DNA of 9,447 nt from Thecamonas trahens ATCC 50062. Taxonomy: Eukaryota > Protista > Apusomonadida. Within the stretch, counting starts at the first letter, position 1. The number at the start of each line of letters is the position of its first letter. Under the pieces are notes generated by a model. It did no database searches, was not told where the DNA came from, and saw only the letters and a list, made by a program, of their open reading frames with translations. Location: assembly GCF_000142905.1 (NCBI RefSeq), contig NW_013657585.1:1-9447 (forward strand). Reading direction: 5' to 3'. This document shows positions 155 to 8,326 of this stretch, one piece after another. Position numbers and translations under genes: made by a program.

Positions 155-340
155 GTATGGGATGGCTGGGTTCTGTAGTTGTGGGGAGGCGGTAGGGAGG
201 CAAGGCGGTGGGAAGGGTTGGCGGTGGTCGGCTGCGGCTCCGGCTGGTTGGTCGCTGGCGGGCTGGTGGGGCTGGCTGGCTGGCAGAGTTGATTGGGGTC
301 GGGGAAAGGACTTATGGGGGAATGGATGAGGCGTGTGTAG
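155..340 (+). other. Putative G-rich spliceosomal intron (EF-hand gene)
   Basis: GTATGG...GTGTAG, 186 nt, phase compatible. Confidence 0.45.
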
Positions 341-1290
341 TGAGCCAGGTGGATCTGTTTGAGCTCAAGGATCGGCTGAAGCGTGTGGCGGTGAAGGAGG
401 GCGGAATCTCGCTGGCGCAGTGGATCAAGACGTTCAAGGAGGTGGGCATCACGGACGATGGCTTTCTCCGCGGCTTTTACTCGCTCTTTGACTCGCAGAA
501 GAACGAGTGGATTGACTTTAAGGAGTTTGCCATCTACTCGGCGCTGGTGGGCCGGCCGCGGCGCGAGAAGAAGGTCGAGTACTGCTTCCGGGTCTTTGAC
601 CGCAACGGCTCGGGCGCGCTGGACAAGGAGGAGATGCGCAAGCTGATCAAGGCTGCGGTCCGAGTCATCAAGCGGTGCAACAACACGCTCCCGGGCCTGA
701 CGCCGTCCAAGAAGCCGTCCAAGATCGAGCGGTTCGAGCTGTCGGCGAGCGAGAAGAAGGCCATTGTCAAGGCTGCCGACAAGATCTTCAAACGGCTGGA
801 CAAGGACGACGACGGCGAGGTCTCGTACCGGATCTTCCAGACCGATGGCGATGTCAAGGAGGTGCGCACTGTTCTGGACTACTTTATGGCGCTCACCGAC
901 GCGCTGCCTGCCGAGCGGGCCTCGTCGTCCAAGAAGCGGAAGAGCAAGAAGGGCTCGGACTCCTCGTCCGACGACTCGAGTTCGAAGAAGGGCAAGCGCA
1001 AGGGCTCGAAGAAGGGCAAGGGGAAGGACAAGAAGGGCTCCAAGAAGGGGAAGGACAAGAAGGGATCCAAGAAGGGGAAGGACAAGAAGGGCTCCAAGAA
1101 GGGGAAGGATAAGAAGGGATCTAAGAAGGGGAAGGAGAAGGGCTCTAAGAAGGGCTCTAAGAAGGACAAGAAGGCCTCCAAGAAGGACAAGAAGGCCTCC
1201 AAGAAGGACAAGAAGGCCTCCAAGAAGGGATCCAAGAAGGGATCCAAGAAGGACAAGGGCAAGGGCAAGGGTAAGAGGAAGAGGAAGTGA
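341..1290 (+). CDS. EF-hand calcium-binding protein (NCS/recoverin/calcineurin-B/calaxin-like) with Lys-rich C-terminal tail; terminal exon, 5' end probably upstream
   Basis: EF loops DSQKNEWIDFKE (490-525), DRNGSGALDKEE (598-633) and degenerate DKDDDGEVSYRI (799-834). EKKVEYCFRVFD precedes the second loop, as in NCS-type proteins. Stop TGA at 1288-1290. The ORF upstream of ~340 is G-rich and non-coding-like. Acceptor TGTAG ends at 340 (phase 1); the in-frame ATG at 322 is an alternative start. Confidence 0.85.
1030..1221 (+). repeat. Coding tandem repeats: 27 bp x4 (KKGSKKGKD/E, 1030-1137) and 21 bp x3 (KKDKKAS, 1159-1221)
   Basis: Four near-identical AAGAAGGGMTCYAAGAAGGGGAAGGAN units and three exact AAGAAGGACAAGAAGGCCTCC units. 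Confidence 0.95.
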
Positions 1291-4222: not shown

Positions 4223-5742
4223 ATGTTTGCGTCGGTCCACCACCCTTCGGGTACTGCTGAGCAGCACCTCGGGTTTACCCTTGCAGCAGCAGCTGTGCTT
4301 CCTCCTGCTGCCCGTAGCGAGCTCCTTGCCGCCATCTCTGAGAAGAGCTCCTCCCGAGCAGTGGTCACCACTCGCCCAGGAGGTGAGGTCATTGTCGGTG
4401 ATGCCGCCACAGCCGTATACGCCATCTCCTGCTCCTCGCCCTCTGCACACCCTTCTTTCTCCACTCTCTCCTCTCTCTACTCGTGGTTGGCTTGGGCCTC
4501 CGCTTGTACGTTCTCCATGCCGTCCCCCCCCCCCCCCCACTTGCCCCCCCTCCCCTCCCGCGATCCCTCCGACACGTCCCGCTGATTGGGGATGATGCCT
4601 GATGCCGCCAACCGATGAGAGTCGCCGCCTGCTGATGGAGCAGGCAGCGAGTTGTCTGAGCTAATTGTGTCACGAAGATGTGCAGGGCTGTGTGAAACGC
4701 GCGATGGATACGGCGGACGGCTGCCAACTCATGGTGTGTGGGGGATGGGTGTTGGGGGACAGATGATGCAAACTCAGCGGCGGCGATCAAGGTGCTGGAG
4801 GAGCATCTGAAGCTGGCGGGATGTGGGCTGCTGAGCGAGCCTTTGGAGGGTGCTGAGGCGTCGCTGGCTGACTACGTGGTGTGCCAGCGGATTGCGACGT
4901 GGAAGGGCGAGAGTTCCGAGCTTGTGGCTGGGTACGTGAGCGGGGCCAAAGCAGCATCTCAGGTGCTTGACAGCGTGCTGAGTGCTGGCGACGCCGAAGC
5001 GGCGCGGTGGAAGGCGCTGGAGGAGCGGCAGGTCAAGCTGCTGGAGGCGATCGGGGCGCTGGAGGCCAAGGTGGCGGCCGGCACGGCCAACACTGGCGCC
5101 GGCGCCGTCACCAGCACCGGGCTGCCGGGCGACCCGCCCGTGCGGCAGGTCGAGCAGACGGTGTCCGAGGTGTGGACCCGGATTGACGGACTGTGCAAAG
5201 AAATGGGCATGACCAAGCATGCGTTCAAGCGCGCACCGCCCGAGTACTACGACTGCTCGCTGCAGTGGCGGCAAGCGCTCCTCGGCGCGCCGTCGATCCA
5301 CCAGCTCTGCAAGTCGATTGTCTTTGTCAACAAGAAGGCACCCAAGGACGTGGTCGACTGCTCCAACCCGCGCATGTCCAAGTACTACTGCGCTATTGTG
5401 CAGTACACCGCCCGGATCAACACTGCCGAGCTCGAGCGGTACGTCAAGTCGCTCAACCCCGGCGTGGCCAAGCGCAAGTTCCACTTCCGCCTGGTCAAGG
5501 ACGACCAGTCGGCCGTCCTCACCGGCTACGGCCACAACGCGGTCACTCCCATCGGCATGGCCACTCCCATCCCCATCGTTCTCGACGCTGCCCTCACCAA
5601 GCTCCCGCAGGGCAACTTCTGGCTAGGCGCCGGTGAGGTCGATCTCAAGATACGCGTCGATGCCAACGAGTTTGTTGCAGCCACCAACTGCTTTGTGGCC
5701 AACTTTACCGAGCCCAACCCGGACTACGCCGATCTCCCCTGA
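4223..5742 (+). CDS. GST-like domain + coiled coil + YbaK/ProX aminoacyl-tRNA deacylase domain protein; exons 4223-4505, 4763-5742 (420 aa)
   Basis: The C-terminal domain has PPEYYDCSLQWRQ, QLCKSIV (conserved Lys), SKYYCAIVQY, LTGYGHNAVTPIG and FWLGAGEVDLK, typical of the eukaryotic YbaK-like family. A phase-1 intron joins LYSWLAWASA/YDANSAAAIKVLEEHL...ASLADYVV (GST-C pattern). Stop TGA at 5740-5742. Exon 1 is less certain than exon 2. Confidence 0.85.
4506..4762 (+). other. Intron (257 nt), C-rich 5' part and G-rich 3' part
   Basis: GTACGT...GGGGGACAG, phase 1. Confidence 0.7.
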
Positions 5743-6020: not shown

Positions 6021-8190
6021 ATGGCATCTCGGTTTGCCGATGCCGAGGATGACGAGACGGTGGGCATGGCGAGCGGACCGATGGTATGTGACATACAGAA
6101 GCCCTTCACCCGTGCCCCCTCCCCCCCAGCCCACCCACACCCTTTACTTCCTTCATGTCACTTTTTGGTTACATGAAGTGCATGCGGTGGGGATGGCGGA
6201 GACGGGGAGGCCACCCGGTGTGGCCGTGAAGAACGGATTGAAGGCGGTGGATGGGCCATTGACTCGGCAGAGGTGGCGGAGCAGGGGCGGAGACGGACGA
6301 GAGGGATAGAGGGCGCGTATGATGTGGGATAGGGGTGGGATCAGGGGTGGGGGTGGTGGGGTGCATGGAGTAGATGGGGTGGGAAGAAGGGAGGTGATGG
6401 CAAAAGGAGCGCGTCTTACACGGCGTGGATGTGGTCGGTGGTGGCGGCGACAGGCGGCGGTCCGGGGCGGAGGCGCAGCGCTGGTGGCAGGGAGCGGTGG
6501 CGATGAGGCTGGGCAGGCTGGTGTGGATGAATCGGAGGAGGTGGCTCCTGCCACGGCTGTGCGGGCACCCAAGCCGGTGGTCATGATGTCCAAGGTGAAG
6601 GGCAACAAGCCGGTGCAGGCGGCGGCAGCGGAGCGCGGCGATGATGTGGCCGAACCCGAGGCATCGATGGAGGAGGAGTGGGACTCTGATGATCTGATGG
6701 ATCTGGAGGGTGACGAGTATGCGTTTGCGCAGGACTTTACGGTGGGCGGCGGGCGGACAGCGTCGAACAACAAGGGCGGCGGCGGCGGGCTGCAGCCGAC
6801 CAAGGCTTCGATGCAGCAGTTCTACACACGGATCGACGTCCGGCGCAAGGTGCAAGAGTCTGAGCGCAAGGCAGCAGGCAGCTCACGGCCCAAGACAAAG
6901 GACAAGGCGGATCGGGCAACGACTGAGCAGGTGCTCGACCCGCGGACTCGGATGATCATTTTCAAGATGCTGAACAAGGGCCTGTTTGATGAGATCAACG
7001 GATGCATCTCGACGGGCAAGGAGGCCAACGTGTACCACGCGCTGGGCGCCAATGGGCAGGGCTACGCGGTCAAGGTCTTCAAGACCTCGATTCTTGTCTT
7101 TAAGGACCGCGACAAGTACGTGACCGGCGAGTTCAGGTTCCGGCGCGGGTACTGCAAGTCGAACCCGCGCAAGATGGTCAAGGTGTGGGCCGAGAAAGAG
7201 ATGCGGAACCTGCTGCGGCTCAAGGCCGCGGGCATCCCGTGCCCGGACGCTGTGGCGCTCAAGCTCCACGTCCTCGTCATGACGTTTATCGGGCGCGACG
7301 GGTGGCCTGCGCCGCGGCTCAAGGACGCCAACATCTCGACCGAGCGGGCACAGTCGGTCTACGTGCAGCTGGTCAAGATCATGCGGACCATGTTTCATGT
7401 GTGCAAGCTGGTGCATGCCGACCTTTCCGAGTACAACATCCTGTACCACCGCAAGAAGCTGTACATCATCGATGTCTCGCAGAGTGTGGAGCACGACCAC
7501 CCGCACGCGCTCGACTTTCTGCGCTCCGACTGCACCAACGTCACCGAGTTCTTCAAGAAGCTCTCGCTCGAGCCGATGACCGCGCGCCAGTTGTTCGACT
7601 TTGTGACGGACCCAAACCTCGCCGACTCGCAGCTCGACGCGTACCTCGATGCCGTCCAGGCCTTCAACGCGCGCACGACGCGGACCGCCGGCGACGACGT
7701 CGCAGACAACGTTTTTATGAACGCGTACATCCCGCGCAACCTCGAGGAGGTCATCGACTACGAGCGCGACATCGACAAGCTCGAGGCCGGCATCAACGAC
7801 GGTATCTACTACGAAAAGCTCTTTGGCATGAAGCCATCGTTGCCCGGCGGCGCCGAGCTGCCTGCCGACGACGCCAGCGGTCTGCCCAACGGCGAGACCG
7901 CGGCCAAGACCGAGGCGGATGATGGCGCTGACGCCGGATCTGTCTCGATCCCGACTACGGTGCCGTCGATTGGCGACGGCGTGGGCGACGGGAAGGATGA
8001 TCCCGAGTACGAGTACGAAGAGTACGACGACGATCCGCTCAAGCGCAAGGTTCTGGACCCGGAGCTGCAGAAGACAATGACCAAGAAGGAGTGGAAGAAG
8101 CTGGTCAAGGAGCACAACCGGATCAAGCGGCAGAACAAGATCCCCAAGAAGGTTAAGAAGCGGCGGCATAAGCTGGCCAAGCAGCGGTAA
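6021..8190 (+). CDS. RIO1: Serine/threonine kinase RIO1 (40S maturation); exons 6021-6083, 6454-8190 (599 aa)
   Basis: Motifs KDKADRATTEQVLDPRTR, STGKEANVYH, KTSILVFKDRDKYV, LVHADLSEYNIL, IIDVSQSVEHDHP and the basic C-terminus KKLVKEHNRIKRQNKIPKKVKK. Exon 1 MASRFADAEDDE resembles the RIO1 N-terminal F-x-D-A motif. Phase-0 intron GTATGT...GACAG. Stop TAA at 8188-8190. Confidence 0.96.
6084..6453 (+). other. RIO1 intron (370 nt), C-rich start and G-rich remainder
   Basis: GTATGT donor; in-phase CAG at 6451-6453. The exact acceptor is not certain. Confidence 0.65.
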
Positions 8191-8207: not shown

Positions 8208-8326
8208 NNNNNNNNNNNNNNNNNNNNNNNNNNNNNNNNNNNNNNNNNNNNNNNNNNNNNNNNNNNNNNNNNNNNNNNNNNNNNNNNNNNNNNNNNNNNN
8301 NNNNNNNNNNNNNNNNNNNNNNNNNN
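8208..8326. other. Assembly gap (119 N) between poly-C tracts
   Basis: Run of N flanked by C-rich low-complexity sequence. Confidence 1.

What the first reader, a model, noticed from the sequence alone, without database searches (positions are those of the whole stretch)
4223..5742. GST-like + leucine zipper + YbaK editing domain: candidate multi-synthetase-complex scaffold with built-in tRNA proofreading
Seen: joining a phase-compatible upstream exon adds a GST-fold-like region (VTTRPGGEVIVGDAATAVYAI...LYSWLAWA...IKVLEEHL...ASLADYVV), then a heptad helix RWKALEERQVKLLEAIGALEAKVAA (5005-5079), then a YbaK/ProX domain with LCKS and NAVTP in place of the GXXXP loop. Known: non-enzymatic GST domains and leucine zippers assemble aminoacyl-tRNA synthetase complexes (Arc1p, AIMP2, AIMP3, EPRS, MetRS), and YbaK/ProX domains deacylate mischarged tRNA. 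From memory, the helix resembles the AIMP2 zipper (ALESRQ..ILKRL.EL.A.V), and LGFTL also occurs in AIMP2. Inference: an AIMP2-like scaffold with rearranged domain order that tethers a trans-editing domain to a synthetase complex. I do not recognise this architecture as described.
Basis: partly seen in the sequence, partly recalled or inferred. Interest (0 to 1): 0.8.

Follow-up and report, generated by a model that had tools for sequence, protein, structure and literature searches.

The report
GST-like domain fused to tRNA deacylase
This Thecamonas trahens gene encodes a known kind of tRNA-proofreading enzyme (the MCP3 branch of the YbaK family) that, only in this small protist lineage, also carries a probable synthetase-type GST-like docking domain, suggesting how such enzymes are tied to the tRNA-charging machinery.

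Summary
The window is a whole Thecamonas trahens contig. A marine-metagenome relative has the same first exon, with an intron at the same position and phase.

The C-terminal domain is a certain YbaK/INS-fold editing domain with the invariant lysine. It is 40% identical to a trypanosomatid orthologue of T. brucei MCP3, a published Ala-tRNA deacylase of the multi-synthetase complex.

The "leucine zipper" is real, but it is the N-terminal helix shared by the whole MCP3 family; in T. brucei this region mediates homodimerisation. "NAVTP" is also the family norm.

Only the first ~145 residues are lineage-specific. Protein-language-model and ESMFold look-alikes point to GST-like domains of AIMP3/eEF1E1 and GluRS. 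A weak hhalign signal sits in the correct register. Pfam, PDB profile searches and AlphaFold2 are not conclusive, so I rate the GST fold at about 0.7.

AIMP2-specific kinship and a scaffold role are not supported. Tethering a YbaK-like editor to a synthetase complex is already published. T. trahens does encode plausible partners: an Arc1p-like cofactor, GluRS with a GST-like N-terminus, and eEF1B-gamma.

Verdict: a new variant of a known kind, of moderate interest.

The parts
4223..4505 (+). Exon 1 (aa 1-94 plus the first base of Tyr95). It covers the N-terminal half of the probable GST-like domain: predicted H12-24, H28-41, E47-50, E56-59, H61-69, H79-95, and the conserved YSWLAWAS block.
   Evidence: NCBI model P0001. 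Conserved exon in L001/L003/L004/L005, BLASTP E 1e-8. Secondary structure from AF2.
4506..4762 (+). Intron, 257 nt, phase 1, GTACGT...ACAG.
   Evidence: The relative L001 has an intron (427-501) at the same position and phase.
4763..5742 (+). Exon 2 (last two bases of Tyr95, aa 96-420, TGA stop at 5740-5742).
4765..4914 (+). C-terminal half of the probable GST-like domain (aa 96-145). It holds IKVLEEHL...ASLADYVVCQRI, which corresponds to the GST_C hallmark 'hL...yL.G...sLAD'.
   Evidence: ESM Atlas look-alikes for aa 1-175. hhalign puts aa 103-138 in register on GST_C of T. trahens eEF1B-gamma, a GST and GluRS-N, at P 0.008-0.04. No Pfam hit.
4915..5085 (+). Long helix, aa 146-202. The conserved heptad core is at 5005-5079 (aa 176-200): d = L180, L187, L194; a = W177, Q184, I191, V198. 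This is the MCP3-family N-terminal dimerisation helix.
   Evidence: AF2 helix with pLDDT 78-95. In the 77-sequence family alignment, columns 180, 187, 191 and 194 are 93-96% hydrophobic, R183 is in 73% and E195 in 63%. Homodimerisation by the Tb MCP3 N-terminal region is reported in PMC11286415.
5086..5160 (+). Low-complexity linker (aa 203-227).
   Evidence: AF2 coil with pLDDT about 57-65.
5161..5715 (+). YbaK/ProX (INS superfamily, MCP3-type) aminoacyl-tRNA editing domain, aa 228-412.
5311..5313 (+). Lys278 (LCKS), the invariant INS-superfamily lysine.
   Evidence: K in 77 of 77 family sequences.
5536..5550 (+). NAVTP (aa 353-357), the position of the GXXXP loop.
   Evidence: At this position N occurs in 69 of 77 sequences and G in 7 of 77; P357 occurs in 73 of 77. 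Trypanosomatid members carry G.

Best explanation
The gene encodes an MCP3-family (INS/YbaK superfamily) aminoacyl-tRNA trans-editing deacylase.

Shown: a two-exon gene; a C-terminal editing domain with the invariant lysine; and, before it, the three-heptad amphipathic helix found in nearly all eukaryotic MCP3-like proteins.

Inferred from the T. brucei enzyme: it hydrolyses mischarged Ala-tRNA(Pro), possibly Ala-tRNAs more broadly, and the helix mediates homodimerisation.

Specific to Thecamonas and one marine relative: about 145 extra N-terminal residues that most likely fold as a non-enzymatic, synthetase-type GST-like domain of the AIMP3/eEF1E1, GluRS-N or Arc1p-N type.

Inferred function of that domain: it pairs with another GST-like domain and so anchors the deacylase to the synthetase/elongation-factor assembly. 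Candidates encoded in this genome are the Arc1p-like cofactor, GluRS and eEF1B-gamma. Anchoring would place proofreading next to tRNA charging and might restrain promiscuous deacylation. The protein is a tethered enzyme, not a scaffold.
For: Gene model and conserved intron.

MCP3 family membership: 40% identity over 184 aa, E 5e-48, to the free-standing YbaK protein of the trypanosomatid Angomonas. Its K-to-G spacing is 73, matching Tb MCP3 K118/G191 (PMC11286415). The family occurs across plants, algae, fungi, Discoba and haptophytes.

Helix.

GST-like N-terminus:
- Atlas feature hits for aa 1-175 are all of the GST_C clan: GST_C/Arc1p_N_like 0.91, eEF1E1 0.89-0.90.
- Atlas structure hits: TM 0.64 over 157 aa to eukaryotic GluRS, and 0.59 both ways to eEF1E1.
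- Among 96 non-self open frames, the two best hhalign hits are GST_C proteins, in the canonical register. GluRS-N gives P 0.039 in register.
- The predicted helix-helix-strand-strand-helix pattern followed by a helical bundle fits the fold.

Possible partners in the genome: Arc1p_N_like + tRNA_bind protein and eEF1B-gamma; GluRS with a GST-like N-terminus.

This is the only PF04073 locus found in the genome.
Against: No Pfam GST family matches at E<=10. The own-genome PF00043 scan does not ring here. PDB sequence and profile searches find no GST.

The GST_C halves of the two relatives cannot be aligned by BLASTP. Atlas hits are leads only.

The plant MCP3-like protein is reported as not being in the plant complex (PMC11286415), so family membership does not imply complex membership. 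No interaction or activity data exist for this protein. N replaces the G of the GXXXP loop; activity of such N-variants has not been tested.
Confidence: 0.55

Rival explanations
1. It is the same MCP3-type deacylase, but the N-terminal ~145 residues are not a GST fold. They would be a fast-evolving, lineage-specific helical or partly disordered extension, for example a regulatory or localisation region with a different partner.
For: No HMM-level GST signal. AF2 pLDDT is low. VIA finds nothing for exon 1 alone. The second half of the region is not alignable between the two relatives by BLASTP. Other family members carry unrelated N-terminal extensions, such as SAM in Rhodelphis P0171.
Against: All Atlas feature hits fall in the GST_C clan, and structure hits reach TM 0.59-0.64 to eEF1E1 and GluRS over 144-157 residues. 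The best non-self hhalign hits are GST_C proteins in register. Even the genuine T. trahens GluRS GST-like domain scores below Pfam's threshold (E 0.033), so a Pfam miss carries little weight.
Confidence: 0.25
2. It is a GST-like domain plus deacylase, but it does not belong to a synthetase complex. The GST-like domain would serve homodimerisation or bind eEF1B-gamma or another non-synthetase partner, and the enzyme would act as a free or elongation-factor-linked proofreader.
For: The plant MCP3-like protein is reported outside the plant complex (PMC11286415). GST-like domains also assemble eEF1B, and eEF1B-gamma is present. Two other family members (P0141, P0191) have an N-terminus that, from my memory only, resembles the eEF1B-beta N-terminal motif.
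Against: The nearest look-alikes are complex-type GST domains: eEF1E1/AIMP3, GluRS-N and Arc1p_N_like. The trypanosome family member is in the complex (PMC11286415).
Confidence: 0.3
3. One reading: an AIMP2-like central scaffold with rearranged domain order that organises the synthetase complex and carries an editing domain.
For: The helix consensus aLE.RQ..iL.Ri..LE resembles, from memory only, the AIMP2 zipper. An AIMP2 cluster appears at rank 14 (0.84) among Atlas look-alikes.
Against: No hit to Pfam AIMP2 families (PF18569, PF16780) at E<=10 or in the genome (uninformative control). No PDB AIMP2 hit with exon pieces, the helix or profiles. LGFTL is not conserved. The helix is shared by about 70 non-GST MCP3-like proteins, so it is not an AIMP2 mark here. 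AIMP3 and GluRS rank higher.
Confidence: 0.05
4. Gene-model artefact: exon 1 is not part of this gene and the protein starts within exon 2.
For: No transcript evidence was available here.
Against: Exon 1, the intron position and phase, and the Tyr junction codon are conserved in a relative at 33-61% identity, on three independent metagenome contigs. Exon 2 has no ATG before the helix.
Confidence: 0.03

Closest known systems
Trypanosoma brucei MCP3 (multi-synthetase-complex-associated protein 3) and 'MCP3-like' proteins of plants, fungi and protists (PMC11286415)
   Same: The catalytic domain is homologous: 40% identity to the Angomonas orthologue. The invariant Lys is present and the Lys-to-loop spacing is similar. 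An N-terminal amphipathic helix precedes the domain. Activity is probably Ala-tRNA deacylation.
   Different: The Thecamonas protein has about 145 extra residues (a probable GST-like domain) ahead of the helix. It has N where trypanosomatids have the G of GXXXP. Complex membership and activity are untested.
Non-enzymatic GST-like domains of the synthetase complex: AIMP3/eEF1E1 (p18), GluRS N-terminus, Arc1p N-terminus (Pfam Arc1p_N_like + GST_C)
   Same: Best language-model and predicted-structure look-alikes of aa 1-175. The W-rich helix and the 'LEEHL...sLADyvv' motifs are in register.
   Different: No significant sequence-profile match. Here the domain is fused to an editing enzyme rather than being free-standing or fused to a synthetase or a tRNA-binding domain.
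AIMP2 (p38)
   Same: A zipper plus a GST-like domain in one non-synthetase protein. The helix motif looks similar from memory.
   Different: The order is reversed. There is no LysRS-binding N-terminus, no Thioredoxin_16 match and no detectable homology. AIMP2 has no enzymatic domain.
Arabidopsis ProXp-ala (At1g44835; PMC9425024)
   Same: An INS-superfamily trans-editor with an appended helical dimerisation domain. It is reported in the plant synthetase complex.
   Different: It belongs to a different INS subfamily (ProXp-ala). Its extra domain is C-terminal and plant-specific, not GST-like.
Bacterial/archaeal YbaK and ProX (PDB 1dbu, 2z0k, 1wdv)
   Different: These are single-domain proteins with 11-24% identity.

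Membership tests
INS/YbaK superfamily (Pfam PF04073 tRNA_edit) | Profile match above the curated cut-off | tested here: met
   36.6-37.3 bits against a cut-off of 25.5, E 3e-9.
INS/YbaK superfamily (Pfam PF04073 tRNA_edit) | YbaK/ProX fold | tested here: met
INS/YbaK superfamily (Pfam PF04073 tRNA_edit) | Conserved catalytic-site lysine | tested here: met
   K278 is invariant in 77 of 77 sequences.
INS/YbaK superfamily (Pfam PF04073 tRNA_edit) | GXXXP loop | tested here: inconclusive
   The protein has NAVTP: P is kept and G is replaced by N. N is the norm in this eukaryotic family (69 of 77) and G occurs in 7 of 77, including trypanosomatids. The effect on catalysis is unknown.
MCP3 family | Sequence homology to trypanosomatid MCP3 | tested here: met
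   40% identity over 184 aa, E 5e-48, to Angomonas deanei P0315. K-to-G spacing is 73, as in Tb K118/G191 (PMC11286415). The Tb sequence itself was not in hand.
MCP3 family | Helical N-terminal extension before the catalytic domain | tested here: met
   Helix aa 146-202. The heptad motif is conserved across the family.
MCP3 family | Ala-tRNA deacylase activity; residence in the multi-synthetase complex | not testable with these tools
   This needs biochemistry. The plant member is reported outside the complex (PMC11286415).
Synthetase-type GST-like domain (Arc1p_N_like / GST_C) | Profile match to GST_C or Arc1p_N_like | tested here: not met
   No hit at E<=10. The genuine T. trahens GluRS GST-like domain also falls below the cut-off (E 0.033).
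Synthetase-type GST-like domain (Arc1p_N_like / GST_C) | GST-like fold (thioredoxin-like half plus helical half) | tested here: inconclusive
   For: Atlas ESMFold-based TM 0.64 to GluRS and 0.59 to eEF1E1, and feature hits 0.89-0.91. Weak in-register hhalign hits. Against: AF2 pLDDT 35-69. A domain-only model of the joined N-terminus could not be made by reference.
AIMP2 | Thioredoxin_16 / AIMP2_LysRS_bd profile matches; order N-peptide, zipper, GST | tested here: not met
   No Pfam hit at E<=10. The domain order is GST-like, helix, enzyme.
AIMP2 | Zipper homologous to the AIMP2 zipper | not testable with these tools
   No tool-derived AIMP2 zipper sequence was available. PDB searches with the helix found none. 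The resemblance rests on memory only.

The most novel reading that the evidence does not exclude
The apusomonad protein would be a 'Rosetta-stone' fusion: an AIMP3/p18-like GST module joined to an MCP3 deacylase. It would show that MCP3-type editors are ancestral clients of the GST-domain network of the eukaryotic synthetase / eEF1B assembly. It would also suggest that the family-wide helix (aLE.RQ..iL.Ri..LE) is the same docking element as the AIMP2 zipper. That would link the origin of the opisthokont scaffolds AIMP2 and AIMP3 to an editing factor in the sister lineage of opisthokonts.
Probability: 0.12. Interest if true: 0.75.

Novelty: new variant of a known kind. Interest (0 to 1): 0.45.

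Why it matters
Watkins et al. 2024 (PMC11286415) leave open how MCP3-type editing factors are held in synthetase complexes. A natural fusion of this editor to a synthetase-type GST-like domain, in the sister lineage of opisthokonts, gives a concrete hypothesis to test: docking through GST-GST pairing with the Arc1p-like cofactor, GluRS or eEF1B-gamma. It also adds a data point on how complex accessory modules were shuffled early in eukaryote evolution. It would not change the general picture, because complex-bound YbaK-like editors are already known.

Tried and rejected
- Pfam on P0001, each exon and the relative's exons at E<=10 gave only tRNA_edit.
- PDB phmmer/hmmsearch with exon 1, the GST_C part plus helix, the helix alone, and profiles A2 and A4 gave no GST or AIMP2 hit.
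- A word-index search of aa 1-190 found only the protein itself.
- A full HMMER scan of 1.84 billion representatives found no protein matching aa 1-127 among the 150 listed. Shorter exon-1-like hits could be hidden among the 950 total.
- A search with the exon-1 profile found only P0279 and P0280, from the same marine lineage.
- A JGI metagenome scan found nothing.
- VIA-wide on the full model was swamped by coiled coils matching the long helix.
- Pfam on 20 longer family members found no GST. It found SAM in Rhodelphis P0171 and an aminotransferase in P0164, the latter probably a merged gene model.
- A literature search for the AIMP2 zipper string found nothing.
- The Atlas search on relative P0002 and on P0141 could not be run because the service was busy.
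- The idea that P0141 and P0191 carry an eEF1B-beta-like N-terminus could not be verified.
- Rejected: LGFTL as an AIMP2 mark, because it is not conserved in the relative.
- Rejected: NAVTP as a peculiarity of this protein, because it is the family norm.

Full report
**What is there.** The window is a complete 9447-nt contig of Thecamonas trahens ATCC 50062, an apusomonad. NCBI's model P0001 is named 'YbaK/prolyl-tRNA synthetase associated domain-containing protein' and has 420 aa. The junction codon T|AT encodes Tyr95. An in-frame TAG lies 18 nt upstream of the ATG. All quoted motifs are at the stated coordinates.

I used the joined product only as database record P0001. I also did not cut out the N-terminal 175 residues as typed letters, so a domain-only fold of the joined N-terminus was left out.

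**Is exon 1 real?** Yes, by conservation. A relative is present in Tara and other marine metagenomes (L001, L003, L004, and variant L005). Its exon 2 product, P0002, is 53-61% identical to the Thecamonas protein. Its upstream exon runs MTSLIVEC...IYSWLAWASK. This is followed by a 75-nt GT..AG intron at the same codon position and phase, and again by a Tyr junction codon. The two first exons align at 33% identity, BLASTP E 1e-8, with an identical YSWLAWAS block. In L004 the neighbouring gene is RIO1, as in the window.

**C-terminal domain (aa 228-412).**
- Pfam tRNA_edit scores 37 bits against a cut-off of 25.5.
- AF2 pLDDT is 94-98.
- Foldseek gives TM 0.86-0.90 to T. thermophilus ProX and 0.84 to H. 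influenzae YbaK.
- K278 is invariant in a 77-sequence family alignment.

**Which family?** Homologues are about 230-300-aa proteins spread across eukaryotes. They occur in land plants, green algae, Mesostigma, a chytrid, Mucorales, a haptophyte, Willaertia, Blattamonas, Rhodelphis and the trypanosomatid Angomonas.

Angomonas P0315 is 40% identical over 184 aa, E 5e-48. Its Lys-to-Gly spacing is 73, the same as the K118/G191 reported for T. brucei MCP3 (PMC11286415). That paper states that T. brucei has only two INS-type domains, so the free-standing trypanosomatid protein is the MCP3 orthologue.

MCP3 is a published member of the trypanosome multi-synthetase complex and an Ala-tRNA(Pro)/Ala-tRNA(Ala) deacylase. 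Its helical N-terminal region (aa 1-66) confers homodimerisation. 'MCP3-like' proteins with N-terminal extensions are noted in plants, fungi and protists (PMC11286415, PMC4394549, PMC12021450). The plant complex holds a different YbaK-type protein, ProXp-ala (bioRxiv 10.1101/815837, PMC9425024).

**The helix.** AF2 predicts one long helix, aa 146-202, with pLDDT 78-95. The core at aa 176-200 has Leu at three successive d positions (180, 187, 194), and W/Q/I/V at the a positions. Across the family these columns are 93-96% hydrophobic. R183 occurs in 73% and E195 in 63%, giving the consensus aLE.RQ..iL.Ri..LE.

So the 'zipper' is the family's own N-terminal helix, not a special acquisition of this protein. 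No tool-derived AIMP2 zipper was available, and PDB searches found none.

**The N-terminal ~145 residues.** This is the only part specific to the apusomonad lineage. No other protein among those listed from 1.84 billion representatives matches aa 1-127. An exon-1 profile finds only the marine relative.

Evidence for a synthetase-type GST-like fold:
- ESM Atlas feature look-alikes of aa 1-175 are all of the GST_C clan: GST_C/Arc1p_N_like 0.91, eEF1E1/AIMP3 0.89-0.90, and AIMP2 only 0.84 at rank 14.
- The Atlas's own ESMFold model aligns to eukaryotic GluRS at TM 0.64 over 157 residues, and to eEF1E1 at TM 0.59 both ways over 144 residues.
- In hhalign against 101 open frames from this genome, the two best non-self hits are a GST and eEF1B-gamma. 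Both place aa 103-138 (IKVLEEHL...SLADYVVCQRI) on the GST_C hallmark motif. The GluRS N-terminus gives P 0.039 in the same register.
- The predicted helix-helix-strand-strand-helix pattern followed by helices fits the fold.

Evidence against:
- No Pfam or PDB profile hit.
- AF2 pLDDT is only 35-69, and the exon-1-only model is uninformative.
- The second halves of the two relatives are not alignable by BLASTP.

One mitigating point: the genuine GluRS GST-like domain of T. trahens itself reaches only E 0.033 in Pfam. I put the GST-like fold at about 0.7.

**Genomic context.** T. trahens encodes an Arc1p-like cofactor (Arc1p_N_like + tRNA_bind), eEF1B-gamma, and a GluRS with a GST-like N-terminus. 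These are plausible GST-pairing partners. This is the only PF04073 locus found in the genome, so it may be the sole INS-type editor there.

**Mechanism.**
- Shown: the domain composition, conservation of the catalytic lysine, and the conserved heptad helix.
- Inferred from T. brucei: Ala-tRNA deacylation, and dimerisation through the helix.
- Inferred from the look-alikes: the GST-like domain pairs with another GST-like domain and so tethers the deacylase to the synthetase or eEF1B assembly.

**Comparison and novelty.** The idea of a complex-tethered YbaK-like editor is published, and the protein is already annotated. What I did not find described, in five literature searches, is an MCP3-type editor fused to a GST-like domain. 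AIMP2 kinship and a scaffold role are not supported. This is a new variant of a known kind, of moderate interest mainly as a natural-fusion clue to how MCP3 docks.

Noticed in passing
L004:1716-3224 (minus strand) and window 6319-8190: In the marine relative a RIO1 kinase gene lies directly next to the YbaK-type gene, as in the window, but in the opposite orientation. This is conserved neighbourhood with an inversion.
   Followed up: partly
P0141 (332 aa) and P0191 (335 aa), residues 1-55: Two MCP3-family representatives of unknown origin start with L..xNg.L..qPYV.Gy.PS.eD..lY....RWA. From memory this resembles the eEF1B-beta/delta N-terminal motif that binds the eEF1B-gamma GST domain. If so, it would be a second, independent fusion of this editor to a GST-network docking module. 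It could not be verified.
   Followed up: partly
P0171 (Rhodelphis limneticus, 490 aa): An MCP3-type editing domain preceded by a SAM domain (Pfam SAM_2, E 1.5e-15). This is another lineage-specific interaction module on the same enzyme.
   Followed up: no
G000:C19:294808-294999 (L006:811-1818, minus strand): T. trahens encodes an Arc1p/AIMP1-like protein (Arc1p_N_like + Lys/Gly-rich linker + tRNA_bind). This implies a yeast-like cofactor for a synthetase complex in an apusomonad.
   Followed up: partly
L022:2274-5171 (minus strand; G000:C6): The GluRS open frame carries a GST-like N-terminus (LDAHLTLRTYMVGYAPTLADLALW). It is interrupted by a His/Thr/Pro-rich stretch that looks like an intron read in frame.
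   Followed up: no
whole genome G000: The six-frame scan finds PF04073 at this locus only. No free ProXp-ala or ProRS-fused editing domain was detected. This is a lower bound, because matches are made exon by exon.
   Followed up: no
L024:1408-2745 (minus strand; G000:C5): The only EF1_GNE (eEF1B guanine-exchange domain) match lies at the C-terminus of an unusual 445-aa Ser/Ala-rich open frame, not in a typical eEF1B-beta.
   Followed up: no
window 8208-8326: A run of 119 N (an assembly gap) sits just after the RIO1 gene.
   Followed up: no
window 208-1290 and 2172-2936: An EF-hand protein with a long Lys-rich KKGSKKGKD repeat tail, and an EF-Ts (mitochondrial type) exon, lie upstream of the finding.
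   Followed up: no
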